From: Hypanus sabinus
Taxonomy: Eukaryota
Assembly (NCBI RefSeq): GCF_030144855.1
Contig: NC_082722.1
Span: forward strand, 26,288,001 to 26,352,000
Length of the DNA: 64,000 bases
Reading direction: 5' to 3'
A model generated the notes under the pieces. That model worked only from the letters and a program-made list of their open reading frames with translations, searched no databases and was not told the DNA's origin. Below are positions 15,066 through 64,000 of the stretch, piece by piece (position 1 is the first letter of the stretch; the number at the start of each line of letters is the position of its first letter). The position numbers and the translations under genes were made by a program.

Positions 15066-15138
15066 CTACAGCTCTAATTTGATTTATGATCACTGAGCTC
15101 TGTATCAGTTAGGTGTATTAAATATGTTTTTCTAACAG

Positions 15139-16444: not shown

Positions 16445-16576
16445 ACTAAGGGAAATGGAGCTGACAAACTGACTTATGCCGTTCTGCAGATTCACGATTC
16501 GAATTACACACAGGCATCTAAACATCAAAGCAAACATACATTGTACGCAGATGTAAAAACATCAAAGAAGCCGTGA
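16445..16576 (+). CDS. Gene A terminal exon with ITIM (LTYAVL) and ITSM (TLYADV): TKGNGADKLTYAVLQIHDSNYTQASKHQSKHTLYADVKTSKKP*
   Basis: Acceptor attacttttacag; phase 0 matches the preceding exon; stop TGA at 16574-16576; AATAAA at 16755-16760; motifs match the ITIM and ITSM consensus. Confidence 0.87.
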   Translation, partial: TKGNGADKLTYAVLQIHDSNYTQASKHQSKHTLYADVKTSKKP

Positions 16577-37476: not shown

Positions 37477-39009
37477 TCAGAGATTGCACTTGACCAGCTG
37501 AGTTCCTCCAGCATTCTGTGTTTGTTACTCTGAATTTCAGAATTTTTTGTGCTTCTGATTTGCTCTGCCGTGAAGAGTGACATGATATACTGGAGGGATC
37601 TCAGAAGCGTTGATGCACAATCGATTTTAGGGTGCACGTAACGACGACACATCAGGATCCAGATAAAAAAGGCGTTTAGCGTACTTGCCCTCTTGGCAGT
37701 ATATTGACAAGTGTTGGGACATCATATTGTACGAGTAGAGAATGTCTAGGCCGGTCTTGGAACGTTGCCGGCTCTTTGGGTCATCCCAGTTAGCACGTAG
37801 TAGAGGTAGAACGATTGCAAAAGAGATTTTATGGGACATTGCCTTGGATGGAAGATTTTAGTGGCACGGAGAGATTGGATAGACGTGGATTGTTTGCTCT
37901 GGAGTTCAGGTGACTGAGGGATAACCTTATGAATTAAAAAAAAACAATTGCTACGGACATTAACATACCGGATGCTCATAGCACATTTCTCAAGACTGGG
38001 GATCCAAATCTGGAAGACGCAGCTGTGAACTGAGAGTGAGAATATCAAAAGGGGAACTGGGCACGGCATGGTTTTCAGACCAAGGATGGTAAGTATATCG
38101 AGAAAGTGTTGTTAGAGGTGTTGGAGGAAGTGGTACCGTACTGCAGGCAGGTATAAGAACGGCTACATGAATATTTCGTTCTGCTTGGATGAAACGGGTG
38201 GAAGAGCCCTCTTCCGTGATGCACTCCAGGATTCAATGTTTTCTGTAAAGATCTACAACAAACTCCTCGTGCAGGATAACAGGAAATTACCAATTGCGTA
38301 GAATAGAAATGCACTAACGAGTCCGCTGATGATATCATGGAAAGCCTTTGTGGTTAAAATTTACATGTGTCTCAAAAATCGATTTGCGGATTGTTGGCTT
38401 TTTTTTAAAGCTCGACGTTTCGGTTGCAGACAATGGATTAAATTTTTAAAAGTGATTTCAAAGCCTTGTCATCACAATTGAATGTTTCTAATGTTGTTCT
38501 GCGAGATCCGTGTTTCGATTTTATGGCGTGTGCATTCTGGAAAGAGAAAAATGAGAGGCTTGACCACAATGTTAAATAAAACAGAGTTTTAAGTTTAATC
38601 TTTAACCATATCAATTGCTGACAGCCTTCCAAGCATGAACAGTTACATCATGAGCATCTATTTGGAGAATGATTGCGCTTTATTTTCAGTTAAGGCCGAG
38701 AATAATGGAATGTTGTCGGATATAGACGTCAGATCACGCCTGAAACTAACAGTGGCCGTTCTATGAATAAAAGTATATTATTTGAGTAATTACTTTCACA
38801 ACCGAGCTTGATTCTGGACTGACATAGCTGTGTAAATGACTTTGGAATGTTATCAAACTTGCAGTATGATGGGTGAAGACATCAGTTCGCTTCGAATCAA
38901 AAAAAAATAATCTAAATGGAAGCAAAAATTGCCTGAAAGGCGAAGACAACCTGAAAATTATAACTTCATCATCCCCATTTATGGCCACGAAAAGTGAGGC
39001 AACACTGAA

Positions 39010-39990
39010 CCTGCGAATCGGTTAGGGTCGTTCTCTGTAACCAGAGCTACCGATTGGGCCTCGTCTACATTGATGAGACCCGACGTAAAGTGGGGACCAC
39101 CTTTTCGAGCATCTCCAGTCCATCCCAAAAAGCGGAATTTGTACTACTGGTCATTTTTTTTTTTATTCCTATCCATTCACGTTCCGACATTTCGATTCAT
39201 GTTCTCTTCTTACGCCTTCATGAGGCTACTCTCAGAGTGGGCGAACAACACCTCGGATTCAGCCTAAGTAGCCTCAAATCTGACGACATAAACATCGACT
39301 TCGTTATTTATCCCTCTCATGTCTCCTTTCTGTTCCCACCTCTGTCCTCTTATCTTCACTGCTCTGCTGCCTATAACCTCCACTTCTGTCCCAATGCCTT
39401 TCCTTTCTCCTAGTCTACTCTCCTCTCCTATTAGATTCCTTATTCTTCAGTTTGCATTTTCAACCTCTTACCTCCCAGCTTCTTACATCATGCCTCCTCC
39501 CAACCGCACACACTCCTTTTCCCCTCCCTCAAAGCCCCGTCAACCTGGCTTCACCTATCACCCTCATCTCTCTTCTGTTCTCAACTCTGTTCTCTTATCT
39601 TTGCTCTCCTGCCGATAACTTCCTCTTTTGTCTCACTTCCTTTCCTTTCTCCCGTAGTCTCCTCTCCTAATGGATTCCTTATTCTCCCGCTCTTTGCATT
39701 TTCAACCTCTTACCTCACGGCTTCCTACTTCATGCCACCGTCCAACTGCACAAGCTTCTCTCCCCTCCAGCCTCCACCACCAAAGTACGCTCAACCTGGC
39801 TTCCCCTATCTCCTGCTAAATTGTCTTTCTTCTCACCGCCTTTTTATTCTGGCATATTCTTCCGTCCTTTCCAGCACTAATGAAGGGACTCGGACCAAAA
39901 TTTTGACCGTTCATTTATTTCTATAGATGCTGCCTGGTCTGCTGAGTTCACTTTGTGAGTGGTGCTCTAGATTCCAGTATCTGCAGGATC
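39010..39990 (+). mobile_element. Penelope-like element remnant (GIY-YIG endonuclease C-terminus and 3' region)
   Basis: GLVYIDETRRKVG (YIGET motif) and HEATLRVGEQHLGFSLSSLKSDDINIDF, resembling the PLE C-terminus; followed by a pyrimidine-rich tail and gaagggactcggaccaaaa terminus. Confidence 0.78.
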
Positions 39991-40159: not shown

Positions 40160-40359
40160 NNNNNNNNNNNNNNNNNNNNNNNNNNNNNNNNNNNNNNNNN
40201 NNNNNNNNNNNNNNNNNNNNNNNNNNNNNNNNNNNNNNNNNNNNNNNNNNNNNNNNNNNNNNNNNNNNNNNNNNNNNNNNNNNNNNNNNNNNNNNNNNNN
40301 NNNNNNNNNNNNNNNNNNNNNNNNNNNNNNNNNNNNNNNNNNNNNNNNNNNNNNNNNNN
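40160..40359. other. Assembly gap (200 N)
   Basis: Run of N visible directly; the round length suggests an arbitrary scaffold gap. Confidence 0.99.
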
Positions 40360-47645: not shown

Positions 47646-50384
47646 AACAGGTATTTACGGATATTGAATTCCCTTGTTAAAGCTTCATAACAGCGCAGTG
47701 TGTAACTTAAATATAATAACAGCGAATAAATTTGCTACCTCATAAGGCAAGTTTTTACTCATCCGACCTGCTGGACTGTGAAGGTCGTATTTGATTGTCC
47801 TTAGGGTAGGGACCTCCGGCGTGGTGACTCGACGTAGATACAGGGACCGTAATATATTTACAAATGTGAATGCAGGTTGGAGGGCAGTGAGTCCCCAGTG
47901 GCCCTCCTTGTACTTTGCACTTTCTGGATGGATCATTCAGATGGCGGATTGAAATAACATTGTTTATTCACAGTGAACCCTTTCTGCATGATGATGAGAG
48001 ACATCAGTTTTTCACAACCAAAGTATTACATTAGTCTATAGACGTATCTTTATAGAGGATTCAAAATGAAGAGGTTTTCTCCAGAGAGATATAATCCTCG
48101 TCTGTAATGAACACAATATGAAGCTTTTGTACAGCAAGATTTAGCTTTACCATGATTCAAAACTGTACACAAGTCTCGAATCAATGGTAATAACCAAATG
48201 CTGACAGTGGGAGGATGCCTAACACAGCAAAAATGCAGAAGGTTATGGACTCAGCTGAGTTCATCAGGAAACCAGCCTCCCAACTTTGTCGTCTGTATAC
48301 ACTTGGCATCACCTTTCCCTCTCATCTCCGCGGTTGCGCCCCAACGTGGCAACTGAAAAACTCCCGCACATGTAGCATTTGTTGCTGATATAATTTTGAA
48401 ATCTATGTAAATATAATTATAAAGTACCCTGTATTTAATTGTGTTGGTCTATATAATCTGTATGTATTTTAAATAACAACCGTACCACAACCATTACTGT
48501 GTAACATTTTAGAGCTTCAACATATTTACAAGCTGTTTATTATCAGTGTTTAAAGTTGCAACGTTGTTAGAAATTCTAACAATAAGCTCAGAATGGAAGT
48601 TAGTAGATCATTGTTTATAAACAGCCAGTCCGTACATAATTCTTCTACAAACCATGGCAAAATTTCCTTCTTGGAGCAATTGTTGGTCCGTGCTGCTGTT
48701 AAAAATTAGGTAGAGGGAACGTTGCTTCACTCTCCCTCAGAAAAGAAACCAGGCTAATTAAGGGAATATCCTCTGCACAGACTGAAGTAGGGTCTCGACT
48801 CGAAACGTTGATTGTTTATACCTATCCATATTTCAGGAGTTTCCAACCTTTTCATGCCACGGACTCCCACCATTAACGGAGGTTGGCAGCCTCTGTCAGA
48901 GATGGCGCTTGACCTGCTGAGTTCCACCCGCATTTTGTGTTTGTTACTCTGGATTTCAGAATCTCCTGTGCTCATAATTTTCTCTGCCGTGAATACTGAG
49001 AGGAATGACTGGAGGGATCTTAGAAGCGTTGATGCAGAAAGGGATTTTAGTGTGCACTTAACGACGACATATCAGGATCCAGATAAGAAGGAGTTTAGCC
49101 TATTTGCCCTCTTGGCAGTATTTTGACAAGAGCTGGAGCAGCATGTTGTACTAGTAGACAATGGTTAGGCTGGTCTTGGAGTGTCTTGTGCTCTTCTGGC
49201 CCAGAGACAGCACGTAGTAGAGTTAGAACGATTGTAAAAGTGATTCTCTGGTACGTTGCCTGAGATGGAAGGCTTTAGTGGCACGGAGAGATTGGATAGA
49301 CATGGATTGTTTACTCGGGAGTACAGGTGACTGAGGGATAACATTATGCATTTGAAAAAAAAACATTACGGACATTAATATACAAGTTGCTCGTAGCCCA
49401 TTTCTCTAGACAGGGAATCCAAATCTAGAAGACACAGCTGTGAACTGAGAGAGAAAATATTTAAAGGGGAGCTGGGCACGGCATGGTTTTCAGACATAGG
49501 ACGGTTGGTATATAGAACAAGTTGTTAGAGGAAATGGTACCGTACTGCAGGCATGTATAAGAATGGCTACGTAAATATTTCGTTCTGAATAGATGAAACG
49601 GGTGGAAGAGCCGTCTTCCGTGATGGACTCCAGGATTCAATGTTTTCTTGCAGCAAATAGCACAGAATAGAAATACACTAACGGGCCCGCTGATGATATC
49701 AAGGAAAGCCTTTTGTGGTTAAAATTTTGTGATGTCTCAAAAATCGATTTGAGGACTGTTGGCTTCATTTTTAAAGTTCGACGTTTAGGTTACAGACATT
49801 GAATTTTTTTTTGTAAAGTGTCTTTAAAGCCTCTTCTTCGCAACTGAATGTTTCTAATGTTTTTCTGCGATATCCGCCTTTCGATTCTACGGCGTGTGCC
49901 TTCTGGAAAGAGAATAATGAGAAGCTTCATCACAATATTAAATAAAACAGAGTTTTAAGTTTTAATCTTTAACCGTTTCACTTGTTCACAGCCTTCCAAG
50001 CGTGAATGGTTACACCATGAGCGACTATTTGGAGAATGATTGCTGTTTATTTTCATTTAAGGCGGAATATAATGAAATGTGGTGGCATATCGACATCAGA
50101 TCACGCACTGAAACAAAGAAGTGGCCGTTCTATGAATAAAAAGATATTTTTTGTGTAGTTTATTTCACAACCGAGCTAGGTTCTAAACTGACATAGCTAT
50201 GTAAATGACTTTGAGGTGTTGCCAAACTTGTAGCATGATGGGTGAAGACATCCGCTTTTTTTCGAATCAAGAAATGTAAAACTAAATGGAGGAAAAAATT
50301 GCCTGACTGGGGAAGACAACCTGAAAATTATAACTTCATTACTTCCACTTAGGGCCATTAACACTGAGTCAACAGTCCACCTGC

Positions 50385-51115
50385 AAATCGGTTAGCGTCG
50401 TCTACTGTAGCCAGAGCTACCGTTGCAGCATCATCTACACTGGTGAGACTAGACTTAAAAGGGGGAACCACATGTTCGACCACCTACAGTCCATACCAAA
50501 ATGCGGAATTTGCTAGTGGCCAGTTATTTTTATTCCTATCCATTCACATTCCAACATTTCCATTCATGTTATCTTCTTACGCCTTCATGAGGCTACTCCC
50601 AGGGTAGGCGAGCCACACCTCGCATTCAGTCTAGGTAGCCTCCACCCGGACGACATGAATATCGACTTCTGCTTGAATTATTTTTTCCTCCCATGTCTCC
50701 TTTCTGTTCCCATCTCTGTGCTCTTATCTTCTCTGCTCTGCTGCCTATAACCTCTTCCGTCCCAATTCCTGCCCTTTCTTCCATAGTCTACTCTCCTCTC
50801 CTGTTATATCCCTTATTCTCCAGCTGTTTGCATTTTCAAACTCTTACCTCCCAGCTTCTTACATCATCCAACTGCCAAACCGCATAGGCTCCTCTTCCCC
50901 CCTCCCTCCAAAGCTCCCTCAACTTGACTTCACTTATCACCTTTCAATTTGTTCTCCATCGACCGCCTTTTTATTCTGGCATGTTCCTCCCTCCTTTCCA
51001 CTCCTAATGAAGCGTTTCGGGGCGAAACGTTAACTATTCATTCATTTCCATAGTTGCTGCCTGGTCTGCTGAGTTCATTTTGTGTGTGTTGCTCTAGATT
51101 CCAGTATCTGCAGAA
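50385..51115 (+). mobile_element. Penelope-like remnant (paralogue of 39010-39990)
   Basis: catctacactggtgagactagac (YTGETR) and catgaggctactcccagggtaggcgagccacacctc, colinear with 39010-39990. Confidence 0.72.
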
Positions 51116-52999
51116 TTCTTGTGTTACTGATATGAATGCTCTTTTATCAGTCCTTTGAGAAAATATTCTACACTATTGGAAGTGGCAACACTGGGAGATA
51201 AGGATAACGTGCTGTGTCTGACGGAGAATTGCTTCGATAGCTGCCGCTGAGAGAAGGGAGAGGAGCATACAGGATGCTGAAGTCTCTTTGGTCTTGGACC
51301 CAATCTTCTCATTATGTTTTCAAAGACAAGAACGAAGTAACAGAAGACCATGGAGATAAATATCAGGTTAGATAGCACAGCACTTTATGGACAACAGCAG
51401 CAAAATATTCGAAAAAAAAAACCGATGACCGCAGAAGTAGAGGAAACATGGAGATTAACGACAGCTCATAGAGCGTCAGCGGAGAGCGAAACAGATTTGT
51501 TCGATTTCTGTTCGATCGCCCGATGAGTGGTTGCAAATTAAGGGAGTGATTTTGTTTCCCACTCTTTGATTTTCCCTACTCTACCAGGCAGGTTTTATGC
51601 TATGATATAAGGACAGTGGAATTTGCAATCCTTGCAAGATACCTGTCAGTACTTTTTAACTATGAGAACGCTCCTTACGGCTGGAGAAACATTTTATGTG
51701 ATAAAGTCATGCACATGGAAATAGGCAGATAGTGCTCAATTCATGGGGTTTCCCGAATAGGGCAACACATCTCTTGAGAGAAATTAATCCAATAGCCTAC
51801 GAGTTAACTCAACTGTCAAATCGAAAACGTTTTATACATCTGATTTTGTCTGGAGAACTTCAAAATTTCTCAAGTCTTCCAAAACGAAAACAAAAGTTAA
51901 GGATTTAAAAATCTTAAAACTCTAAAGAAATGTTTATCTTAGTTATTAGTACTTTCAAACAGATTAAACACCGCTTTAGCAGTGAATAAAATTCAATTAA
52001 CAGGCATTTGACGATTTACATACAATCTGGCCAATATTTGTAAGGTTCATTTTAAACTCTTCAGACATCTGTACTTTTTTTTACCCTCGACTGCGATTAT
52101 CATCATTCCCTTCTATTAACCAGGAAGAGAATATTGCTCTCAGCATCAAAAGTCAGGTGGATATTTTTTCACACAAATTAATTTCATATGAGTGGGACAG
52201 TTATCTTCAGTCCTTCAGTTCACCCTAACATGCGACCACAATTGCAGAATGCTTTGCTGGCTTACGGGAATAAATTATACAGGCACAGAACACATTCGCC
52301 CGATAACATCCATGCTGGCTATCAAGCACCAATTACGTAAATCACACAATAACCCTATAACATTCTCGCAACACTCTACTATCCCCGGCATTCCAAGGAA
52401 CACATCCCACCACCATTCGGCCCATTTTGCCTATCTAGACCGAGAAAGCTATCCCAGCTAAATCCGTTTTCTTGCGTTTGTAGCTTATCACAGTAAATAT
52501 TTTCTATGTGTGTACCAGTCCAAATGTTCCTAACACAATGCAATCGTACCCACTTCTACAGATTCATCCCGTGATCTATTCCAGTTACCAAGCCCATTGT
52601 TTCGGAAAACTTGCCACAGTTCCATTTAAATGTTTTCTCACTCATCTAGAATCGATAGATTCTCATTCTCGATTCAGTTATTCTGGGTAATAGACTGTAA
52701 CCATACCCCTGCTTACGCCCCTAAATATATAAGGTCACCACTAATCCTCCTGTGCTCTAGGGAAGCGTAACCCCACACTTTCCCTACAGTTAAAAACATG
52801 CTGTCCCGCAAATGTATTTGTGAATCTTTTCCAGACTATTTCAAGCTTCGTCGGGCCTTTTCTATAGGCGGCTGATCAGTAATGCACAGAAAACTCTGAT
52901 ATGCATCACCAACGACTTGTACAGTTGAAGATGACGGCTCAGGTGCTGTACTCAGTAAATAAATGTGACCAGTGCCTACCTTCGTCGCCAGTGTGACCA

Positions 53000-54190
53000 T
53001 CTCTATTACCAGTTGAAAGATCAACTTACATGTACCCTCATTCACTTTGTTTTACTTCAATGCCCTGAGCAATCTACTGTGCAATGGTTTAACTAACTAA
53101 AATACAGAATTTCCCAAATGCCTGAGTAATATACAATTGCTTTCGCAGTTATCGTTTTAGATACCTTTCACTGTCTAGTATACCACCAATTTCGTTGCAT
53201 TCCGAAAGATATTAACGAAGTTAAAAAAAATCATCTGAATACTTCGGAGATGACAAAAATACTAGAAATGGAGCCTACCTGTTCAGTACACCACTAGTTG
53301 CAGGCGGTCATTCTTGATAACAAATTTCCACTATCACTGTTTGTGTCCCTCGACTAAACCAATTTTGCATCCTTGTGCCCAGGTGGCTGGCTCACACTGA
53401 CTCCCATGTCATCGAGTCTTCTGTTCAAGTCCACCATATGGGACCATACAGAAGTCAATGAAGTTATAGTCCAATTGATGCACACCGCAATTTTCTTCAT
53501 CACTTCATCAAAGTAACTCAATCAAATTTGTGAGATGAGATTCCAAATGAAAAATCCATGCTGACCTTCTCTTTTTCAACCTTTCCCTTTTCAAATGATG
53601 ATAGATTCTCTCCCTCCAATCAGCTCTAGTATGTTTCCACGCACCCATGTTGGGTTCGCCACATTCAGCTCTCCTGTTGGCCTTGCAGATCTTCTTAAAT
53701 AAATGCCCATTTGCCACTCTCCAATGCGACGGTAACACAATCTCCGTTAAAGATGATGCTGATATCTTTGCAATAGACCTTACATTTTTTTCCTTTAGCT
53801 TCTCACAATGTCAAAAGATACATTTGATCAGGTGCCGTAAGCTCATCAAACGGTCTCAGTTCTTACACCGTGAACACCCCGTTCCCATTTTTCTCATGTG
53901 GATCTGTCAAAAACTAACGTAATTCCCTTTAATCCCTCAATTTCCATGATTTTCACCACAATGATGGGAAATAATAATTTACAGCTCTGACATCGCGATT
54001 TCTTGGTCGCTATTTCCTCATTTCCTTTTGCTTTCTATTCAGAAGTTCTATCATGCTACATTTGTGCTCTCATGATTCCCGTCAGGTCTATGATGCAGGT
54101 CTCCTTTCTCCAAAACAGTGTCTCAATGTCCTCGTGAACCGGGATTCTCTAATCCTGTTGGCCTTGCCATTCTCTTTACCGATACCACTC
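53000..54190 (-). mobile_element. Ancient CR1 remnant upstream of gene B; homologous pieces at ~25480-26155 and ~41240-41945
   Basis: Shared strings such as actatcac..tctgatt/gtgtcc..aaaccaattttg..ggctggctcac.ctg.ct.ccatgtc in all three copies; minus reading HLTNLIE. Confidence 0.7.
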
Positions 54191-54465
54191 GTGCATTTTA
54201 GCGGCAGTTAAAAAGGACGTCGCCTTGAAACAAGAGAGGAAAATTTAAATGAGGTTGCGAATCAGGTACATTATGCAAAGAGTAGCATGCGACTTGACAG
54301 TGCTACAAGAGAGTGTTGATTTGAACACAACGGTTAAAAGACATTCAAACATGGCCACGAAGAGGCAAAAAAGAGCGATGTCGACCATGTCCGAAGGGAT
54401 ACAATACAATTTGCATTATGATCGATGCAGATATCATTGGTCGAAAGAGATTTTCCTGTGCTGTC

Positions 54466-54625
54466 TGAAGGGTGATTGATAAGTTCGTGGCCTAAGGTAG
54501 GAGGAGATGAATTATACATCTCTCGTTACATGCACGACAACTATTTGAGTATTCATGCAGAAAGTTTGAAGTTAATGCCTTATCTCTTTCTACCTTAGAC
54601 CACGAGCTTATCAATCACCCCTGAT
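54466..54625. mobile_element. Tc1/mariner-type MITE with ~31-bp terminal inverted repeats
   Basis: gggtgattgataagttcgtggcctaaggtag pairs with ctaccttagaccacgagcttatcaatcaccc (2 mismatches). Confidence 0.7.
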
Positions 54626-55141
54626 GAGTTTATTAACTTCAAGTGGTAAAGGACTGAGTGAGAAGAAATCTGTTAGGACAGGACATTGGACTAGTGGAGA
54701 AAGTGAACGAGGAACAGCAGGTAAGCGAAATGAGGAGAAGAGAAGGGAGAAAATTGGACCCGGTATGGGAAATAGAAAACGATGAAAAGAGTACGGGAGA
54801 ACTTACTGAAAGTTAGAGAATTCTATGCTCAGATCAGCAGGTTGGAGGTTATCGAGACTGAATATAAATCCACCTATCAAGTGCCATCTCTTTACGTCCC
54901 CTCTCCCCACTTATCACCTGATAGTTTATACGACTTTCCCTCCCCTATCTCCTTATTGTGACTTCTTCCCCCTTCCCTTCCAGTCCTGAAGAAGTATCTT
55001 ACTCCGAAACATCGACTGCTTATTTTTCATCATTGATGCTGAGCTCCACCTGCGCTTTGTGTGTATTCCTCGGGATTTCCTGTATCTGCAGCATTTCTTC
55101 TACACAAGGCATGGACGGAGGCTTGACCATGTAACTTAATA

Positions 55142-55147
55142 TATAAA
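55142..55147 (+). promoter_or_regulatory. Possible TATA box of gene B
   Basis: TATAAA 62 bp upstream of the ATG. A competing acceptor-like site (tctatctttcag, ~55187) could instead indicate an upstream non-coding exon. Confidence 0.3.
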
Positions 55148-55208
55148 GTGCACTTGATTATTACAGTTTATGAATTTCTATCTTTCAGACAGACCACACT
55201 CATTTGCA

Positions 55209-55263
55209 ATGCCGGTGGATACAACCGTTTGTTTCGTGGCTCTGATCGCCGCGTCTTGGCCAG
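55209..55263 (+). CDS. Gene B leader exon (phase 1): MPVDTTVCFVALIAASWP(A)
   Basis: ATG in gcaATGc context; hydrophobic signal-peptide core; donor CCAG|gtatgc; 185-bp intron to the V exon. Confidence 0.85.
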
Positions 55264-55448
55264 GTATGCTTAAATTTTTGAGCCCAATCTATGAAACAGA
55301 CATCTTACAATATTTCCATCATTTACCCGCAGCAAATTTAGCCATAGTAAACATCCAATTCGTATACCAGTGTTCTGCATATTTTGTCTGTTGATTCGTT
55401 GTCCAGTGAATGCAACTGTTTTCAGCAATCTCACTTGTGCTTTGTCAG

Positions 55449-55754
55449 CCTCAGAAGGAACATCGGCCAAAGTGGAACAATTCCCTACTATCTTAAATGC
55501 CTCAATCGGTGGAAATGAATCCATGCACTGCAAATTTCCAATACTACGAGATATTGCTGAAATTTCGTGGTGGAAGGAGGGTCAGAACGCATTTATAGAA
55601 CCAGACAGCAGAAATCAGTTCAATGTAATCAAAGGCGGCAGCACTTTTACCCTCCTGAATGTGAGATACGCAGATGTCGGCGTGTATTACTGTCAAGTGA
55701 AAAATCAACAACAAATATTGGGAAATGGAAGTGGCTCTCTGCTTATTGTGTTTA
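55449..55754 (+). CDS. Gene B Ig V-set domain exon with germline J-like G strand (phase 1-1)
   Basis: Acceptor gctttgtcag, donor TTTA|gtaagt; 306 nt: KVEQFP...SMHCKF...ISWWK...FTLLNVRYADVGVYYCQVKNQQQILGNGSGSLLIVF. Canonical Cys-Trp-Cys, D-x-G-x-Y-Y-C and G-x-G-x-x-L-x-V present. Confidence 0.93.
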
Positions 55755-56084
55755 GTAAGTGTCTTTATTCCTGTAAGTGGAAAAGTGTCATCTGTTTGCA
55801 TTTGAAAAAAAGCCAAGATTGTGGAAATGTTGTGAAATTTTATTGCTAGTGGTAACTTTGTGCCATTAATATGCTTTCCACCTTTTTTTAAAATAGGAAA
55901 ATATCATTTCGGATTTTTTCAGATTATTCTGTTATTATTTTGATGAGATTCTGCAGAGTGGCTTTTGCTCCACTTATTATTTGGTCCTTCGATATTTCCA
56001 ATCATATATTTGTTATGCCTATATACTTCCACAACTCCTCACCCTCTCCCCGCCTTGACCTATTCCTCAGCCAGCCGATAAGAA

Positions 56085-56735
56085 CATAAGAACATAAGAA
56101 ATATGAGCAGAAGTAAGCCATCCTGCCCATCGAGCCTGACCCGCCATTCATTAACATTATGGTTGATCTTTCCATAAACTCAGCTCCATCTACCAGCCTT
56201 TTCCTCAGAGCCGTTAATTCCGCCACTATGCAAAAATCTATCTAATTGTATCTTAAATATTCAGGACAGAGAATTTCACAGATACACCACTCTTTCTGAA
56301 AAACAATTTCTCCTCATCTCCGTCCTAAATCTTCTCCACTGAATCTTGAGGCGATGTCCCCTAGTTTCTGTCTCACTTACCAATGGAAACAACTTTCCTA
56401 CTTCTATCTTATCTATCCCTTTCAAAATTTTGTATCCTTCTATAAGATCCCCTCTCATTCTTCTGAATTCCAGAGAGTATAGTCCGAGGTGACTCAATCA
56501 CTCCTTTTCATCTCTGGACTCAACTCGGTGAACCTCCTCTGCAATGCATCCATAGCCAATATATCCTTTCTCAAGTATGGTGACCAGAACTGTACACAGT
56601 ACACCAGCTGCAGTCACCTGAACCCTGGATCATTGCAGCATGACCTCCCAGCTCTTGAATTCATTACCTCCAGCAATGAAGGCCAACATTACACTTGTCT
56701 CTTAATAACCAGTTGCACACGCAAGCCAAATTTTT
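56085..56735 (-). mobile_element. CR1 3' fragment(s) in the V-C1 intron
   Basis: (aagaacat)n tail at ~56080-56100; minus ORF LGLYSLEFRRMRGDLIEGYKILKG...TRGH. Confidence 0.9.
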
Positions 56736-57302
56736 GAATGTTACTTTTATATTACGACATCTCGACGTATTTCGCCGATTTCGACCCGAAACTTGCTAAA
56801 GCGCACAGCTACAAATATTTATAAGTAATTAATAAACATCGGCAAAGGCAAACAAAGCCTCTTCATTAATGTCAATTACGGGACGTATGAGTAAAGCCTG
56901 CACAGAGAGATACACAGCTTGATCCGTGTGCTGCTCCGCAATGCCCATCCCATTAAAACGAACATAAAAATGCAGATTCACTGCCTCATTTTACGTTAAT
57001 ACAAAATCGACCTTCAAGGGTAGAGGTAGGTACAAAAATGGCCTGTTGGAAGAAGCAATAAAGTCACTCCTAGCACGCGCTAAGTCTGCCACGTTCATTC
57101 CAAACAGGCGTGCGTTCCTCAACTGTCACCAACGCATCTGTTTTGTCATGTTTACTTACCCCCTGCAATAATTATTAACTGGCAAATTCAGGGGATTTCA
57201 AACGACCGCAATGACAACAGTTGAGTGTGTTAACGTGAGAAGGAGAATACATGCGAGCAAATAATAGCTAACCATTCTACGTCGCGTTTTATTCTGTTGC
57301 AG

Positions 57303-57599
57303 CTCCCCCAACTCCGCTGAAAATCATTCGTGTTGAAGAAACTTCACCGAAATCCCGGAAACTCATGTGTAAAACTGCACCATTTTATCCGAAGAAATTA
57401 GACATCTTTTGGCGAAGAAATAATATAGAAATTCTAACCAAAATAGAAATGGCAATAAATGAGACTTCAGAAGGATTTTTTGAAGCTTTCAGTACTTTGG
57501 AAGATGCACAGCCTGCGCAGGGCAAAGTGGTTTACACTTGTCTGGTAAATCACGAAACGCTCAAACGTCCTGCCATTTTCAGGTATATTATCGAACAAG
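57303..57599 (+). CDS. Gene B Ig C1-set domain exon (phase 1-1)
   Basis: Acceptor ttttattctgttgcag, donor CAAG|gtaaga; 297 nt: (T)PPTPLKII...KLMCKTAPFYPKKLDIFW...GFFEAFSTL...VYTCLVNHETL. The C-x4-FYP-x5-W and Y-x-C-x-V-x-H signatures are C1-set. Confidence 0.92.
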
Positions 57600-57699
57600 G
57601 TAAGACAGGAGACATTTAAAACGAGCTGCAACCTGAATGAGAATAGGCCTGGAGAGCTGTGCAAACACAAAAAGGAAATTGTGAAATCTATTTCTTTTT

Positions 57700-58620
57700 T
57701 CAACGGGGTAAAGTTAACGTGTGTATGGTTTTTACATTATTTACAGCCTTAAACCTGCAAGGATATGTGGGTGTCAACGACAAAGGTAGAAAGAGGAAAG
57801 AGGTCCGACTGAGGGAATCAGAGCAGCTAGGCACTAACTTAAAATGCAGAACGAAAATCTTGTTAATCTCTGGATTACTACCTGTGCCACGTGCAAATTG
57901 GCGCAGGGTTAAAAAGATCAGAGAGTTAAAAGTGTAGCTCAACAACTGGTGTGGAAGACCTGGGGTTCAATTCATGGGAAATTGGCACCGGTATTGGAGA
58001 ACGAGTCAGCTTTTCCATTGGGAAGGGCTCCACCTGAACCGTGACGATCCTGGCGAATTGCATAACTAGAGTTGTGGATAGGGCTTTTAAACTAAGTAGC
58101 AAGGGGGTTGGTTCAGCAGATTTTAGAAGTATGGATGAAGTAAAAGAGAAAAGTGTGGATAAAGGTAAAGAAAAAGCAAAAGTTACGAAAAGCGAGAATA
58201 TTAAGGGTGGAGTGCAAAAAGGGCACGTGTACAAGAGACAAAGTTCACAAAACTTTAAAGACACAGAGTGTAAGGGCAGTTTCCCCTCAATGTCCATAGT
58301 ATCCGTAGCAAGGTCAGTGAAATTGTGGCACAAATCAGTATAAAGGCGTTTGGTTTAGTGGTCGATACAGAAACATGGCTGCAGAATGGAGAAGATTGGA
58401 AATTAAATATCCAACGATATCAGGTAATACGGAAGGATAGGCCGGAAGATGAGGGTGATGGGGAAGTATCTTAAATAAGGATGAGATCAGGACAATAGTG
58501 AGAGACAGAGGCAGGTAAGTATGGAGCATCGTGCAGTTTAACTTGCACATATATTAGGTGACTCAAGATGATCGAGACCGACTTGAGGAGGACTTCATAG
58601 AATCCATACATGATAGCTTT
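57700..58620 (+). mobile_element. CR1 ORF1/APE fragment in the C1-TM intron
   Basis: YVGVND...KILLISGLLPVPRANWRR...GLHLNR, followed by WLQNGEDWKLNI. Confidence 0.8.
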
Positions 58621-59639
58621 CTTCAACTGCATGCTACTGAACATACAAAGGAACATGTTATCTTGGAAAGCAAACACGAGGAGATCTGCAGATGCTGGAA
58701 ATTCAAGCATGTGTAAAGGACATACAGTATACTATCACCAACCAAAATTTCAAGCGAGAAATAGACTATGTCATCAGAAGATCAGGAATTATGTGAATAT
58801 TACCTTCTGTACGGTAATAGCATCGTGACCAAAAAAAAAAAAAGAACATACTTATAGAAGGTTGTTCAAAAGGCTCTGTGAATTCAGAGTGTGATCTAAC
58901 TAGTCGGCTGAGAATATTAAGTGGCAATTTCTTTCAGCCAGCGATAGATTCCATGTCATGTAAGAGTCAGTACTGAGAGGTTTCTTCGCTGAGAGGTTGG
59001 TAAATCTTTGTAATTGCTCCCTCCTAATATTGTGCATGTGTATTCATTGGAAACATTCGCGACTGATATCGTTATATTTCATACCAGTTGAAAATGGAAC
59101 CATCTGAACCGTACAGGAAAGTGATAGAGGATCAAGCACAATTTTGGAAGCTGGTCACGTTTATAAAATGTCAAATCATATTTATTTATGTTTCAAATAT
59201 TCATAATAATATTTAAATATATCCATTGTTCCATATTCTGTTCTTTTTAACTATTTGCACAGTTCTACACCTTTGACTACCTCTGCACTTAAAGCTGGAA
59301 TTCTCTCTGCAAGTGTCTTTGTTTCATTACTTAATCTAAACCTGCTCGTTTGTCTCTCCGGTTTTGACCAAGTACCTAGTCACTTCTCCTTATATAGCGT
59401 TCGGATTGTGCTTTTTAACATTCTGTTCATGCATCTTGTGATGATTTATGAAAGTAAAAAGTTATTTTCTCATGTGTTCCAATGGAATCAGCTGATGGAG
59501 TTTCCCAGTGACAGTCTAGAAATAGAAACGATGTCACTTGAAATCTTCGATCAAACTATCTGCAAAGGCATCGTTAAAATAAAAAAAAAATCTCTTATTT
59601 CAAATGAAAAATACTCACTGTCAAGAACCAAAACACAAA

Positions 59640-59820
59640 CAAGAGAATATATGCAGCTGCTGGAACTCTATGCAACACACACAAAATGATGGATGAACTC
59701 AGCAGGCCAGGCAGCACCAGTCCTACCGAAGCGTCTCGCCCGAAACGTCGACTACTTTTCTCCAGAGATTCTGTCTGGCCTGCTGAGCTCCTGTAACAAT
59801 TTTTGTGTGTTGCCCTGGAA
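59640..59820 (-). repeat. Penelope-derived short repeat(s), partly inverted pair
   Basis: gaactcagcaggccaggcagc...cgcccgaaacgtcgac...ctggcctgctgagctcc. Confidence 0.65.
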
Positions 59821-60013
59821 AGGACGACTATGTAAGATAATCTGTTCACTCCGTAAGTCCTATCATCACCTTACGACTCGCGTCATATTGCGGCTCTTGC
59901 AAACTTTATTTGTTCAGGCCTGAATTACCCATTAAAATGTTGTACTTTCTTGTCGCACGGTCTTTATATATTTATCTATGTTTCACGGTTTCTTCTATTA
60001 TTTCCATATCTAG

Positions 60014-60115
60014 GAAACTCCTATAAGCTCCTGACTCTCCGAAATGCATTGGTCGGACTGGCAATTACTTTTCTGATTATAATCTTGATAATAATCGGAG
60101 TTATGACAAAATCTG
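60014..60115 (+). CDS. Gene B transmembrane exon (phase 1-1): (G)NSYKLLTLRNALVGLAITFLIIILIIIGVMTKS
   Basis: Acceptor tttccatatctag, donor TCTG|gtaaga; 102 nt; ~20-residue hydrophobic helix preceded by Arg. Confidence 0.9.
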
Positions 60116-60550
60116 GTAAGAACATGAATGACTTGACAAACGTTTCCATTTATTACCTCTGTAGATTAAAAAGACATGATAATGAGAGAATCAAGTTTTT
60201 TGAGGCATTATCCGATTCGCATTCGACAATAGTAATGATAAATAACACTATAATTTTACATTCTCTTTCAATTTTTAATCATTCCTTGTACCAGCTTTTC
60301 AGGCTGTGACTTCCTGCGGTGATTTTACACAACTACCGCCACTTCACTCTTTCAATCAAAATCTAGATGCACCACATTCATGAAAGGTCATGCGCAACAC
60401 ATTTCATGGCCACAATGTGCACCGTACTATTTTGAATACCTGCCAGGAGTTGCATCTTTAGCAAAAAATTTGATTGCAATCTAATGCGCAACTTCAACTT
60501 TTATAACATTATTGCTGTTATTTAATGTGCTGTATTTTTTAATCCATTAG

Positions 60551-60594
60551 TTACTCAAAGAACCTCTGAGGAAGCAAGTCAGAGCGGAGAACCG
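60551..60594 (+). CDS. Gene B cytoplasmic exon 1 (phase 1-0): (V)TQRTSEEASQSGEP
   Basis: Acceptor tttttaatccattag, donor CCG|gtaggt; 44 nt, as in gene A 6534-6577. Confidence 0.82.
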
Positions 60595-61118
60595 GTAGGT
60601 GAGACAGTTTTTCTTTTTGCTTCTCAGAAGGGTATATTGTTAGGGGAATATTATGATCAAGTACAACCTCAGAATGGACATGTCTGTGAGTGCATGAGAA
60701 CCCATGACAACCACTGACCCGCAAAACGTTGCTTCAATGGCCCATAGTGCCCGGGGAGTACAAAGGTGACAGTTGTCCCTGCGGAAACTGTTGGGGAAAG
60801 GATGAAAAGGGAAATAACCGAGGAAGGAAAAATATGACGAGAGATGAGAAACTCACCCTACTTGTAGAATAGACTAAAAATGGTGCTTGGAAGTCAATTT
60901 CAATCTTAAACGATCATAGCGACTTTCAGCATTAGGGAAAACACATTTCGTACCGTTTCTGACACAACATACATCGCAATATCGTTTACTGATGTTAGAA
61001 TGTTATTATGCCGCATTTAACTCATTTACATTTACGTTTTCAAACTCATTTGCTCTTTATGGAATTGGAATTGCATTAGACTCGCCACTAACTGTGTTAA
61101 CGACCCTTTGCGTAACAG

Positions 61119-61229
61119 GCTGGACGAGAGCCAGTTGAACATAACATTGACTATGCTACAAGAAACGTGAGAGAAAAGAAAAGATTTCATCAGGTCAGAC
61201 GCCAGGACGATCATGTTGTCCATGCAAAG
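61119..61229 (+). CDS. Gene B cytoplasmic exon 2 with inactivated ancestral donor: AGREPVEHNIDYATRNVREKKRFHQVRRQDDHVVHAK
   Basis: Acceptor cgtaacag; homologous to 15139-15249 but followed by ctaaag instead of gtaaag. In-frame internal donor CAG|gtcaga at 61193/61194; read-through stop at 61281-61283. Confidence 0.72.
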
Positions 61230-61746
61230 CTAAAGCCAAGGGATTGGGGGCGGACCCGATACAAAATAAGCATTGTTTTTTGAGAAAAAAATGTCTTAAA
61301 CTATAAAAACGCATTGGTCTAAATTTGACATTATGGTGGTTGGTGGTGGTCATCCGCTTCTCTCGAAAGACAATGGCTGATGATGATTATCATCACAAGC
61401 CAGGACGGAAGGTGTGGAGATCCTAAGATTTCCATTCGTCACAATCCGGCTGTCGGCCTCACCAGTGTACACCAAAGGAAAGCTTATGAAGCAATACGTT
61501 TGGCAGCAGCTTGGCTGAAGAAGCTCCCGGAAAGATGTTCAATAACTTCCGGCCGCCTCCGGGGCTCCAGTCCGTATTTGCTGACCGGGTTTCCTACCGT
61601 AGTTTTCGATTCTCCCAAGGCAATGGAGGTAATTACCCATGACTGCGGATCTGGTTCACGAGCACCAGGACGTGTCCACATGCTGGTGGACCTGCATGCT
61701 GCATGTGCAGGGGCGAGGCTTCCTCCCCATCCTCCGTATGCAGCCC

Positions 61747-62059
61747 GAGTCCGAAAGCAGTTTAATTTCCCTGTAAAATAATACATTAAACAATAATGTA
61801 AAACATGGCAACGAAACCGTAGCGAAGAACAAAGAAACAGAAGTATCTGTTTTGTCTCTTTCAGTACAGACTGTTTTAAGTGTCTGTAATCTGAAAATGA
61901 AATTTTCATTTTCAGATTACCGCCATTTAAAACAGTTTGCGCTGAAAGAGACAAAAGAGATACTTCTGTTTCTTTGTTCTTCGCTAAGGTTTCGATGCCA
62001 TGTTTACCATTATTGTATAATGTACTATTATACACGGCAACTAAACTGCTTTCGGACTC
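61747..62059. repeat. 313-bp near-perfect inverted repeat (hairpin), probably a palindromic MITE
   Basis: gagtccgaaagcagttta...ctgaaaatgaaa pairs with tttcattttcag...taaactgctttcggactc; axis at 61903 with essentially no loop. Confidence 0.92.
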
Positions 62060-62134
62060 AGACTGCTTTTTTTGCTGGACGATGCTTTTTTGCTGGACAA
62101 TTGACAAAGTCTCGATATTGAATTACTTCTACAG

Positions 62135-62269
62135 ACACGACATGGTGGAGAAGAAAAGTTGAGATATGCCGCTGTGCAGCTTCCCAAAAATAAAACATCG
62201 GCAGTTAAGCACGGCAACAAGGAGTCAGTGCACGCAGATGAGAAGCTTTCACAAGAAGCAAGAAGCTGA
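62135..62269 (+). CDS. Gene B terminal exon copy 1 with ITIM (LRYAAV), ITSM lost: TRHGGEEKLRYAAVQLPKNKTSAVKHGNKESVHADEKLSQEARS*
   Basis: Acceptor aattacttctacag; phase 0; aligns without gaps through the motifs to the gene A terminal exon; AATAAA at 62443-62448. Confidence 0.82.
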   Translation, partial: TRHGGEEKLRYAAVQLPKNKTSAVKHGNKESVHADEKLSQEARS

Positions 62270-62992
62270 AAATCGAAAGAGGCTTCGGTTCTGTGGACTG
62301 TGAACGAATGCATTCCCAAAGGATTGTTTCCCCTTATCTTCTGCAGGGAGACTAAAGAGCGACGGCTGAAATAATACTGAAGGTTAAGAATATGAAAAGT
62401 GGACATTGTGACATACGGGCGAAATTTCTATCCGACCCTACCAATAAAGATATTTTCAACTACAAAAGAAGGACAGCGATATCCATTTAAAGAGAATCAA
62501 TAATCTGCCCTAGCTCATATACGTCAGCTTGCAGAACAATTATATCGCTGGCTAAATATCATCACAATTTGTGATGTCCTTTTACGATAATTTCCAGTTC
62601 AAGTTAAGCATTAATTCTGGTGAAACAACCACCTGTGAGCTCAGTAGATAAATTAGGTTGCGGAAATCAGACAGAGATAACACAATTATGCGCTTGCATT
62701 GTGAGTCAGAAAAGCATTTAGTAACATTATTTCTCTACTCTCCTAATTAGATTTGCCTAAAATTCATTTTCAGTAAGCAAAGAGACATTCATTTTTCTGT
62801 GAGACAAGACAGGCTCTTACCGTTGAAATTCCATATGAATCAAAAAGGGAAATCTTGAAAAAACGTTAACATAAACCCTGTATAAAGATGTAGTAATCTA
62901 AAATTGATAACTGATGAGTAAATCACTAATTTATTTTACAATCGTTTGATTCAGTTAGTCGCCTAATGCTCGAATTTGAATTATTTTCACAG

Positions 62993-63019
62993 ACTAAAAC
63001 CATGTTGCTCACAAACTGA
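62993..63019 (+). pseudogene. Gene B terminal exon copy 2, frameshifted; encodes only TKTMLLTN* if spliced
   Basis: Acceptor aattattttcacag. Nucleotide homology to 16445-16620, including the upstream intron (tgattcagt.agtc) and 3' UTR. One base shorter before acaaactg, ITIM codons read TSIAL; AATAAA at 63161-63166. Confidence 0.7.
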
Positions 63020-64000
63020 CTAGCATAGCTCTGAAGCTTCACAGTTCAAAGAGCACGTCAGCATGCAAACTTCTACGCAAATATACGCAGATATGCAAGA
63101 AACACATCAAAGAGGCTGTGGAGCTGAGAATGCAGTTGTAATACTGAGCTGTAGACCACCAATAAATGCAAACCCAAGGCATTGCTTCGTTTAATTCCTT
63201 ATGTCCAGACAAAGAATGACAATCGATAACATATATCTGAGTTGGGAAGATAAGAAGTCATTTTCGTCTTCGTCTTCGACATTATTCTGAATCTTTGGAG
63301 CCAATTGACGCTGATAAAAATGTAAGAAACTGAAGGATAGAATCGGTAATAAGTCAGACACCACCATCACGCCTCTCTCTTCTGCCCGGCCATTCAATGT
63401 GATAATATCTGATATGCTCATTCATAATATCCTCCTCTGGCCCATCGCACACTCCCCAATCATTTATAAAAAGGAATTACTTCCAGCAAATACATCCCAA
63501 TGATTCTACCCCAACATTCCTCAGACGGTGAAAAAAAAAACATCCAGAGATTCGCCGCCATTGGCGAGACAAAACTTGGTTAAATTTGAGTAGAAGCCGC
63601 CAATTATAAAAAAAGCTATTCTAGCTCCGCTTACAACCGCTCCACCACTCCAGATTTGTTCGACCTATCACCTGACAGCTACTGTTGCAGACATCCTTCT
63701 CGCATTTATTTATTATCTTCCCTCTACACTCTAATCCCGAGTCGGGATCGCCAAACTTTGACCATTCTCTTGCCTTCACACACATTGTATGGCACATTTA
63801 ATTCATCGAGCAGCTTCTTTTTATTTCAGCCCAAAGAGTTCAGAGACTAGATCGTACTATAAGAGGAAAACAACAAATAAGTGATTGGCATCTCGTAAAC
63901 ATTCACCGAATTGTGCTCCAACCCACAGGAAAACCGATAAATAGGGGTATTGAAATCAGCTGTTAAATTCCATGGGACTGCAGTGTGTATCTTAACTAAA

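What the first reader, a model, noticed from the sequence alone, without database searches (positions are those of the whole stretch)
55209..62269. Non-rearranging VJ-C1 receptor gene with an inhibitory tail: antigen-receptor architecture in an innate-type paired family
Seen in sequence: a complete exon set of leader / V / C1 / TM / cyt1 / cyt2 / terminal, with consistent phases (1-1-1-1-0-0). The single V exon already contains a J-like G strand (GNGSGSLLIV, cf. FGxGTxLxV), and I see no recombination signal in or around it. The second domain is C1-set (CKTAPFYP...W, YTCLVNH). Established knowledge: V(J)+C1 is the TCR/IgL chain layout; C1-set domains are largely limited to antigen receptors, MHC, tapasin, SIRP and some B7 members; non-rearranging VJ-C1 genes (chicken PRARP, amphibian VJC1, SIRP) are discussed as relatives of the pre-RAG receptor. 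Inference: this is a multicopy VJ-C1 family with ITIM/ITSM tails in a probable cartilaginous fish. The ORF track fragments it, and automated annotation would likely give it a generic SIRP-like or Ig-like label.
Basis: partly seen in the sequence, partly recalled or inferred. Interest (0 to 1): 0.85.

Follow-up and report, generated by a model that had tools for sequence, protein, structure and literature searches.

The report
Ray SIRP-like V-C1 receptor gene
This is an intact gene of a stingray-like fish for a cell-surface immune receptor shaped like an antibody light chain; it belongs to a large, unnamed family found only in sharks, rays and chimaeras, but this copy's inhibitory tail is partly eroded.

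Summary
The seven-exon gene is real. The exons splice with GT/AG sites and intron phases 1-1-1-1-0-0 into a 337-aa type I membrane protein. The second domain is C1-set (Pfam 33.4 bits, cut-off 21). The first is a short Ig domain whose single exon already holds a J-like G strand (N-G-S-G-S-L-L-I-V). No RSS heptamer lies within 7 kb.

It belongs to a multicopy family that I found only in Chondrichthyes (rays, sharks, chimaera). RefSeq names its members inconsistently: SIRP-alpha-like, NCR3LG1-like, Ig lambda-like, TCR-beta-like, PD-L1-like, tapasin-related-like. I found no paper describing it. The family has ITIM/ITSM-tailed members, and sharks and chimaera also have short-tailed members with an arginine in the membrane span.

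This copy's tail has decayed:
- The ancestral cyt2 splice donor is lost (GT to CT).
- Two of three conserved tyrosines are now His.
- Only one ITIM (LRYAAV) remains.
- All four models of its closest relatives (Hypanus, Mobula) lack the ITIM tail.

Fold searches cannot separate SIRP-alpha, B7-H6/butyrophilin and Ig light chain as nearest relative (16-22% identity each). Descent from a pre-RAG receptor is untested.

The scan had already found other members of this family in the same genome, 79 kb and 522 kb away.

The parts
55209..55263 (+). Exon 1: start codon and signal peptide; donor CAG|gtatgc, phase 1
   Evidence: The leader is conserved with P0199, P0197, P0001 and P0002.
55449..55754 (+). 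Exon 2: V-type Ig domain with Cys codons at 55529-55531 and 55691-55693. An in-frame alternative acceptor lies at 55403 and is used in the Hypanus model.
   Evidence: Pfam Ig_3, I-set and Ig_2 pass; V-set scores 25.1 against 26. All 32 family V domains hit V-set at E<=1e-3.
55724..55750 (+). J-like G strand N-G-S-G-S-L-L-I-V inside the V exon. It has a GxG bulge, and Asn in an N-G-S sequon stands at the position of the J Phe/Trp.
   Evidence: Alignment A1: G93, G95 and V100 are nearly invariant. The model shows the G strand broken at G-x-G.
57303..57599 (+). Exon 3: C1-set Ig domain with Cys codons at 57368-57370 and 57539-57541
   Evidence: Pfam C1-set 33.4 bits against a cut-off of 21. All 32 family C domains hit C1-set. 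The best PDB matches are MR1/MHC-I alpha3, beta-2-microglobulin and UrIg2.
60014..60115 (+). Exon 4: stalk and membrane span (hydrophobic core 60046-60105). Arg-Asn lies at its outer edge, and the Cys conserved in the family is absent.
60551..60594 (+). Exon 5 (cyt1), 44 nt, phase 1 to 0
   Evidence: It matches the tails of P0166 and P0013.
61119..61193 (+). Exon 6 (cyt2) as modelled, using a new donor CAG|gtcaga. It holds IDYATR, which is not a canonical ITIM.
   Evidence: The crude donor score is 6.9 bits, against 5.9-11.1 for the other exons.
61194..61231 (+). Remainder of the ancestral cyt2 exon. The Tyr codon is now His (CAT, 61221-61223) and the ancestral donor GT is now CT (61230-61231).
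   Evidence: Alignment with gene A and with P0013. The donor score is -2.1.
62135..62269 (+). Exon 7 (terminal): ITIM LRYAAV at 62159-62176, the former ITSM now S-V-H-A-D-E (His codon 62231-62233), and the stop codon at 62267-62269.
62443..62448 (+). AATAAA, a candidate polyadenylation signal 174 nt after the stop codon
5787..16576 (+). 3' half of a paralogue, gene A. It comprises TM 5787-5891, cyt1 plus read-through 6527-6634, cyt2 15139-15249 (VIYSQ) and terminal 16445-16576 (LTYAVL, TLYADV). Its ectodomain exons lie outside the window.
   Evidence: tblastn with family proteins and DNA alignments.

Best explanation
This is a germline-joined (non-rearranging) gene for a type I membrane glycoprotein. 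The protein has a signal peptide, one V-type Ig domain with a J-like G strand, one C1-set Ig domain, a membrane span and a cytoplasmic tail.

It belongs to a multigene cluster family found so far only in cartilaginous fishes. The family's typical members carry a membrane-proximal ITIM (L-T-Y-A-x-L) and a distal ITSM (T-x-Y-A-x-V). By analogy with SIRP-alpha and other ITIM receptors, these members presumably recruit SH2 phosphatases after ligand binding by the V domain (inferred). Other members, in sharks and chimaera, have an Arg in the membrane span and short tails, and presumably signal through an acidic adaptor (inferred).

The copy in this window keeps an intact ectodomain but is losing the inhibitory tail. 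It most likely acts as a weakly inhibitory or tail-less (decoy-type) receptor. I put the chance that its mature mRNA carries the LRYAAV exon at about 40%.
For: Gene model and phases.

Domains.

No RSS heptamer within 7 kb.

Family spread. 112 of the 150 best representatives are family-like by BLAST. Every family member that I had named is chondrichthyan, from 19 species. The profile score drops from 209 bits to 45 bits outside the group.

Corroboration of the model. The spliced protein aligns over its full length with Narcine, Mobula and Heterodontus proteins, tail exons included.

Orthogroup. The window gene pairs with Hypanus P0001 (support 99/96) and then with Mobula P0002, P0197 and P0199 (100/99). 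Narcine, which has the full tail, is the sister.

Tail decay.

Membrane-span types.

Tail motifs across the family.

Structure. The model of the Hypanus orthologue's ectodomain has pLDDT 91.9 and shows two beta-sandwich domains.
Against: No transcript evidence for this gene was available, so exon use, above all for exons 5-7, is unverified.

The modelled cyt2 donor has C at +3 and is new in this copy.

The family Cys at the outer edge of the membrane span is missing here.

Ligand, expressing cell type and phosphatase recruitment are all inferred.

The relatives' models are automated predictions. Two of them carry spurious repeat-derived 5' exons, so their short tails could also be annotation artefacts.
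Confidence: 0.8

Rival explanations
1. The family is the cartilaginous-fish orthologue of SIRP (SIRP-alpha, -beta, -gamma), and this gene is a SIRP.
For: Foldseek against Swiss-Prot models ranks rat and mouse SIRP-alpha D1-D2 first (E 1.8e-13, TM 0.81 by query). Both have a J-like G strand, C1-set domains, ITIM tails of the L-T-Y-A-x-L type and paired charged-membrane-span forms. Many RefSeq names say SIRP-alpha-like.
Confidence: 0.15
2. The family is the shark and ray B7H6 (NCR3LG1) or another B7/butyrophilin-type ligand.
Confidence: 0.08
3. The family is a surviving relative of the non-rearranging V(J)-C1 chain from which Ig and TCR chains arose, closer to antigen receptors than to any innate receptor.
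For: It has the V(J)-C1-TM chain layout with phase-1 introns. Ig light chains are the best Foldseek matches in the PDB (E about 1e-14). The family C1 profile's highest-ranked PDB chain gives its best single-domain score, 45.6 bits, to a domain that reads like an Ig lambda constant domain. The shark non-rearranging UrIg2 is fourth in that list and second for the single exon.
Against: TM scores to light chains are only 0.4-0.47. The J Phe/Trp is replaced by Asn, in most members within a glycosylation sequon, which argues against VL/VH-type pairing (inference). The V domain of this clade lacks a C'' strand. Similarity to MHC, SIRP and B7 domains is about as strong. The literature favours UrIg and UrIg2, which are linked to the MHC and to the Ig/TCR complex (PMC12227049, PMC10751288).
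Confidence: 0.1
4. This particular copy is a decaying gene that is no longer expressed as a functional protein.
For: The ancestral donor is lost, there are two Tyr-to-His changes, the family Cys near the membrane is missing, and the TM-exon read-through is frameshifted relative to Hypanus and Mobula.
Against: Exons 1-4 are open. All structural Cys, Trp and glycosylation sequons are kept. The ectodomain is 83% identical to the Hypanus relative with no stop or frameshift. All splice sites of exons 1-5 are canonical.
Confidence: 0.12

Closest known systems
SIRP-alpha / SIRP-beta (signal-regulatory proteins; paired receptors of tetrapods)
   Same: Both have a non-rearranging N-terminal Ig domain with a J-like GxG G strand followed by a C1-set domain. 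Both have ITIM-bearing inhibitory members and charged-membrane-span short-tailed members. SIRP-alpha is the top Foldseek match among reviewed proteins.
   Different: This family has one C1 domain, not two, and a shorter V domain. Identity is only 19-21%. The partner charge is Arg near the outer third of the span rather than Lys (the SIRP-beta detail is from my own knowledge). CD47 binding and synteny are unknown. No tetrapod orthologue was detected.
Ig light chains and TCR chains (rearranging V-J-C1 chains)
   Same: The order V, J-like strand and C1-set domain is the same, and the introns are phase 1. They are the best Foldseek E-values in the PDB. The family C1 profile's top-ranked PDB chain scores best on a domain that reads like an Ig lambda constant domain.
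   Different: V and J lie in one exon with no RSS. Asn, in most members within an N-x-S/T sequon, replaces the J Phe/Trp. The protein has a membrane anchor with ITIM/ITSM signalling. The domain angle differs (TM 0.4-0.47).
UrIg / UrIg2 (non-rearranging shark antibody-like genes; PMC12227049)
   Same: They are non-rearranging, begin with VJ-C1 and are restricted to cartilaginous fish. UrIg2 is among the best sequence matches of the C1 domain.
   Different: The crystallised UrIg2 fragment is V-C1-C2-C3 and forms disulfide-linked dimers with an IgG-Fc-like C2-C3 part. The present family is V-C1-TM with inhibitory or activating signalling features and many copies.
B7-H6 (NCR3LG1) and butyrophilins
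   Different: The present family has a J-like strand, a short V domain, ITIM/ITSM tails and Arg-in-membrane partners. Identity is 16-21%.
Uncharacterised V-C1-TM-ITIM proteins of catfish and piranha (for example LOC132870382 of Neoarius graeffei)
   Same: They share the domain order, a G strand G-N-G-S-T-V-I-V, a Pfam C1-set hit on most members, and a single V-Q-Y-A-S-L motif in the tail. They are the only non-chondrichthyan hits of the family profile (E 3e-6).
   Different: Identity is 24%. Their V domain has extra cysteines. The profile-profile probability of 98.6% does not discriminate among Ig domains, so kinship is unproven.

Membership tests
Ig C1-set domain (Pfam PF07654) | Score above the curated cut-off, and above the C2-type models | tested here: met
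   C1-set scores 33.4 bits against a cut-off of 21. C2-set_3 scores 20.7 against 27. All 32 family domains hit C1-set, best E 1.5e-15.
Ig V-set domain (Pfam PF07686) | Score above the curated cut-off; C' and C'' strands present | tested here: inconclusive
   The window exon scores 25.1 against 26, and only on its C-terminal half, while I-set and Ig_3 pass. All 32 family V domains hit V-set at E<=1e-3, best 2.8e-15. The model of the Hypanus orthologue shows A, A', B, C, a one-residue C', D, E, F and G, with no C''.
Germline-joined 'VJ' domain | J consensus F/W-G-x-G-T-x-L/V-x-V encoded in the V exon | tested here: met
   The exon encodes N-G-S-G-S-L-L-I-V at 55724-55750, and the family consensus is G-N-G-T-G-S-x-L-x-V. 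The GxG, the S/T, the L and the V are kept, and the F/W is Asn. The match is therefore five of six positions.
Non-rearranging gene | No recombination signal sequence flanking or splitting the V exon | tested here: met
   The nearest CACAGTG on either strand is at 47969, and there is none in 48000-64000. V and J lie in one uninterrupted exon. I searched only for the exact heptamer.
ITIM-bearing inhibitory receptor | (I/V/L/S)-x-Y-x-x-(I/V/L) in the cytoplasmic tail | tested here: met
   There is one match, LRYAAV at 62159-62176. It is present in the protein only if the last exon is spliced in, which is unverified.
ITSM-bearing receptor | T-x-Y-x-x-(V/I) | tested here: not met
   The homologous site reads S-V-H-A-D-E in this gene. 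It is T-L-Y-A-D-V in gene A and in the Mobula and Hypanus paralogues.
SIRP family | V domain followed by two C1-set domains (SIRP-alpha, -beta, -gamma) | tested here: not met
   There is a single C1 exon between the V and TM exons. Clean family models likewise have V then C1 directly before the membrane span.
SIRP family | Orthology shown by phylogeny and conserved synteny; CD47 binding | not testable with these tools
   No vertebrate genome context or reference SIRP sequences could be fetched. DNA for the Hypanus locus was unavailable.
Paired activating/inhibitory receptor family | Close relatives with a charged residue in the membrane span and a short tail, alongside ITIM-tailed members | tested here: met
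   Arg in the span plus a D/E-H end and short tails occur in P0012 (Scyliorhinus), P0181 (Heptranchias), P0194 (Callorhinchus), P0206 (Cetorhinus) and P0207 (Carcharodon). None was seen among the rays sampled, and none is in this window.
B7 / butyrophilin family | B7-type V domain without a J motif, IgC domain, ligand-type tail | tested here: inconclusive
   The fold match is top-ranked but not distinctive. The J-like strand and the ITIM/ITSM tails speak against membership. No B7H6 reference sequence was available for a direct test.

The most novel reading that the evidence does not exclude
A paired family of germline-joined VJ-C1 receptors is shared by rays, sharks and chimaeras, so it predates their split (about 420 Myr by PMC3964593). 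It has ITIM/ITSM-tailed members and Arg-in-membrane members. It would be an undescribed sister lineage of SIRP and/or of the antigen-receptor chains that still has the single V(J)-C1-TM chain layout postulated for the pre-RAG receptor. Its possible catfish and piranha relatives would make it an ancestral jawed-vertebrate family that tetrapods lost.
Probability: 0.2. Interest if true: 0.8.

Novelty: new variant of a known kind. Interest (0 to 1): 0.55.

Why it matters
Genes that join a V domain with a built-in J strand to a C1 domain without rearrangement are rare. They are central to the debate on how antibodies and T-cell receptors arose. In cartilaginous fish the papers I could read (PMC12227049, PMC10751288) discuss UrIg and UrIg2 as the non-rearranging VJ-C1 genes and name NKp30/NCR3 as a non-rearranging, MHC-linked VJ gene.

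A large, clustered, apparently unnamed V(J)-C1 family with inhibitory and putative activating members adds a new comparison point for three questions:
- the origin of SIRP-type paired receptors;
- the history of the C1 domain outside Ig, TCR and MHC;
- innate immune regulation in the oldest jawed vertebrates.

This copy also shows how an inhibitory receptor can lose its tail step by step. In practice, the inconsistent RefSeq names for one family show that its annotation needs curating.

Tried and rejected
- Paralogues in the window. tblastn with the spliced protein found only the tail exons of gene A and no second ectodomain.
- Other long ORFs in the window. They are LINE fragments or have no Pfam match, so the window gives no synteny markers.
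- Hypanus locus DNA. It could not be fetched because the file was too large. That ruled out dN/dS, a check of orthologous tail exons and any view of neighbouring genes.
- PDB sequence and profile searches. They rank multi-domain Ig chains by summed score and do not separate SIRP, B7 and Ig.
- Profile-profile match to the catfish family. I rejected it as proof of kinship, because any two Ig profiles score highly.
- An activating role for this copy. Its Arg lies outside a 20-residue hydrophobic core and is Gly in the Hypanus and Mobula relatives.
- Literature. Seven full-text searches found no description of the family. The B7H6 paper of 2012, the UrIg paper of 2023 and the 2015 review are not held.
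- The spliced 337-aa protein. I therefore used single exons and the relatives found with them.


Full report
**Gene model.** I rebuilt the exon set from the sequence. The seven exons are:
- leader, 55209-55263
- V, 55449-55754
- C1, 57303-57599
- TM, 60014-60115
- cyt1, 60551-60594
- cyt2, 61119-61193
- terminal, 62135-62269

All are flanked by AG and GT. The intron phases are 1,1,1,1,0,0. The exons join into one open frame of 337 codons ending at TGA (62267-62269). An AATAAA lies 174 nt downstream of the stop. A second in-frame acceptor lies 45 nt upstream of the V exon (55403) and is the one used in the Hypanus model.

**Domains.**
- C1 exon. It scores as Pfam C1-set at 33.4 bits (cut-off 21), above the butyrophilin Ig-C model at 20.7 (cut-off 27). 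Its best matches among solved structures are the alpha3 domains of MR1 and MHC class I, beta-2-microglobulin and the shark UrIg2.
- V exon. It passes Ig_3, I-set and Ig_2. It misses V-set by one bit (25.1 against 26), and that match covers only strands E to G.
- Family level. All 32 sampled N-terminal domains hit V-set at E<=1e-3 and all 32 second domains hit C1-set.
- Shortened V. The copy here belongs to a clade with a shortened V domain, with 54 residues between the two cysteines.
- Structure model. An AlphaFold model of the Hypanus orthologue's ectodomain, built on 45 family sequences, has pLDDT 91.9. It shows strands A, A', B, C, a minimal C', D, E, F and G, with no C'', and a G strand broken at G-x-G.

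**J-like strand and rearrangement.** The G strand reads N-G-S-G-S-L-L-I-V. The family consensus is G-N-G-T-G-S-x-L-x-V, with both glycines and the valine nearly invariant. This fits the J consensus F/W-G-x-G-T-x-L-x-V, except that Asn stands in place of Phe/Trp. In most members this Asn is part of an N-x-S/T sequon. If it is glycosylated, it would cover the face that Ig and TCR V domains use to pair; this is my inference. V and J lie in one exon. The nearest exact RSS heptamer on either strand is 7.5 kb upstream of the V exon. The gene is therefore germline-joined.

**Family and spread.**
- Exhaustive search. An HMMER search with the C1 exon gave 331 hits at E<=0.001, the best at 8e-46. By BLAST, 112 of the 150 listed proteins are family-like.
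- Taxa. Every family member that I had named is from a cartilaginous fish. The rays are Hypanus, Hemitrygon, two Mobula species, Narcine, Pristis, Amblyraja and Leucoraja. The sharks are Heterodontus, Heptranchias, two Scyliorhinus species, two Chiloscyllium species, Hemiscyllium, Mustelus, Cetorhinus, Carcharodon and Rhincodon. The chimaera is Callorhinchus.
- Clustering. Within each species the members sit on one chromosome-sized record.
- Boundary. With a family profile the score falls from 209 bits to 45 bits outside the group.
- Names. RefSeq's automated names for this one family include SIRP-alpha-like, NCR3LG1-like, Ig lambda-1-like, TCR beta-like, PD-L1-like, CD276 homolog, MHC class II-like and tapasin-related-like.
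- This genome. The window also holds the 3' half of a paralogue, gene A. Earlier notes of this scan report further members 79 kb and 522 kb beyond the window, so this genome has a cluster of more than 0.5 Mb.

**This copy and its tail.**
- Placement. In a maximum-likelihood tree of 41 ectodomains the window gene pairs with Hypanus P0001 (99/96, 83% identity). It then joins three Mobula proteins (100/99). Narcine P0200 is the sister (100/97).
- Typical tail. Narcine and most other long members carry L-T-Y-A-x-L and often T-x-Y-A-x-V.
- Damage here. Alignment with gene A shows three changes. The ancestral cyt2 donor CAG|GT is AAG|CT. The Tyr just upstream of it is His. The distal T-L-Y-A-D-V is S-V-H-A-D-E.
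- What is left. By a crude weight matrix of my own it scores 6.9 bits, within the 5.9-11.1 range of the gene's other donors. One canonical ITIM, LRYAAV, remains. IDYATR is not one.
- Relatives. The four models of the Hypanus/Mobula orthogroup have short, mutually different tails without an ITIM. The Hypanus tail is a read-through of the TM-exon donor. The same read-through is found in a Mobula paralogue and is frameshifted in this window.
- Short-tailed models. Short-tailed RefSeq models such as P0010 and P0166 likewise end in read-through of the cyt1 donor. They are therefore not evidence for activating partners.

**Paired forms.** A separate membrane-span type exists in sharks and chimaera. 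It has an Arg in the outer third of the span, a D/E-H end and a short tail. It occurs in proteins from Scyliorhinus, Heptranchias, Callorhinchus, Cetorhinus and Carcharodon. This is the signature of adaptor-coupled activating partners, so 'paired family' holds for the family. It does not hold for this window. Here the Arg lies outside a 20-residue hydrophobic core and is Gly in the Hypanus and Mobula relatives. Most ITIM-tailed members also have a Cys at the outer edge of the span (G-C-A-G-G), which may form an interchain disulfide (inference). This copy has Asn there.

**Nearest known families.**
- Foldseek against reviewed AlphaFold models ranks rat and mouse SIRP-alpha D1-D2 first (E 1.8e-13, TM 0.81). 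Ig kappa, BTNL9, tapasin-related protein, Skint, B7-H6 and TCR beta follow within one order of magnitude, all at 16-22% identity.
- Foldseek against the PDB ranks Fab light chains first, but with TM 0.4-0.47.

Fold therefore confirms a V-C1 ectodomain of the SIRP, B7 or light-chain kind and cannot assign it to one of them. SIRP membership fails on the one feature I could test, the two C1 domains.

A possibly related group of uncharacterised V-C1-TM proteins exists in catfish and piranha. It has a G-N-G-S-T-V-I-V strand and a V-Q-Y-A-S-L tail. The link is weak: 24% identity, 45 bits, and a profile-profile match that does not discriminate among Ig domains.

**Literature.** Seven full-text searches found no description of this family. 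The two papers on the shark MHC and on UrIg/UrIg2 treat UrIg and UrIg2 as the non-rearranging VJ-C1 genes of cartilaginous fish and name NKp30/NCR3 as a non-rearranging, MHC-linked VJ gene. They state that several VJ-C1 genes are known in tetrapods (PMC12227049, PMC10751288). I could not read the 2012 paper on shark B7H6, so I cannot rule out that some members were treated there.

**How it most likely works.**
- Shown: an intact signal peptide, two Ig domains with all structural residues, a membrane span, and one ITIM in an exon that can be spliced in frame.
- Inferred: surface expression on leukocytes, ligand binding by the V domain, phosphatase recruitment by family members with ITIM plus ITSM, and adaptor coupling by the Arg-span members.
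- For this copy: the balance of evidence favours a receptor with weakened or lost inhibitory signalling.

**Limits.** I had no transcript data, no orthologous DNA, no synteny and no curated reference sequences for a decisive phylogeny. The spliced protein could not be sent to the large search tools as one piece, so family-level results rest on single exons and on the relatives found with them.

Noticed in passing
window 5787-16576 (+): This is the 3' half of a paralogue, gene A, with an intact tail: VIYSQ, LTYAVL and TLYADV, and a consensus cyt2 donor CAG|GTAAAG. Its cyt1 exon can also be read through into a short tail that matches Mobula P0010.
   Followed up: partly
window about 63007-63100 (+): This is a weak relic of a second terminal exon downstream of the gene. 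One frame resembles gene A's '...KLTYAVLQIH...' with the Tyr replaced (Smith-Waterman score 50 against a shuffled maximum of 37). A neighbouring frame holds 'IYADM'. A frameshift would be needed to join them.
   Followed up: partly
window 38245-38388, 39189-39302, 49654-49713, 50556-50678, 53340-53462: Dispersed repeat copies match the N-terminal extensions of RefSeq models XP_059849401 (Hypanus) and XP_062923620 (Mobula). Those extra 5' exons are therefore probably repeat-derived annotation artefacts.
   Followed up: partly
window 60116-60309 (+): The read-through of the TM-exon donor stays open for 64 codons. Its first 20 or so residues match the annotated C-termini of Hypanus P0001 and Mobula P0170, and the window is then frameshifted relative to them. 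An ATTAAA lies at 60165. This may be a conserved short-tail isoform in other rays.
   Followed up: partly
window 10834-11826 (+) and 12784-13641 (-): These are fragments of a LINE-type retroelement: reverse transcriptase (RVT_1) and an ORF with a GDSL esterase-like domain. Other long ORFs in the window have no Pfam match.
   Followed up: no
P0214 and relatives (catfish, piranha): This is an uncharacterised teleost family with V, C1, a membrane span and a single V-Q-Y-A-S-L motif. It has a G-N-G-S-T-V-I-V G strand and extra cysteines in the V domain.
   Followed up: partly
P0212 (Narcine bancroftii): This relative has the family V domain joined directly to a membrane span and a tail holding V-H-Y-V-A-I, with no C1 domain.
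   Followed up: no
window 40160-40359: A run of 200 N, which is an assembly gap or masked stretch. I left it as it is.
   Followed up: no
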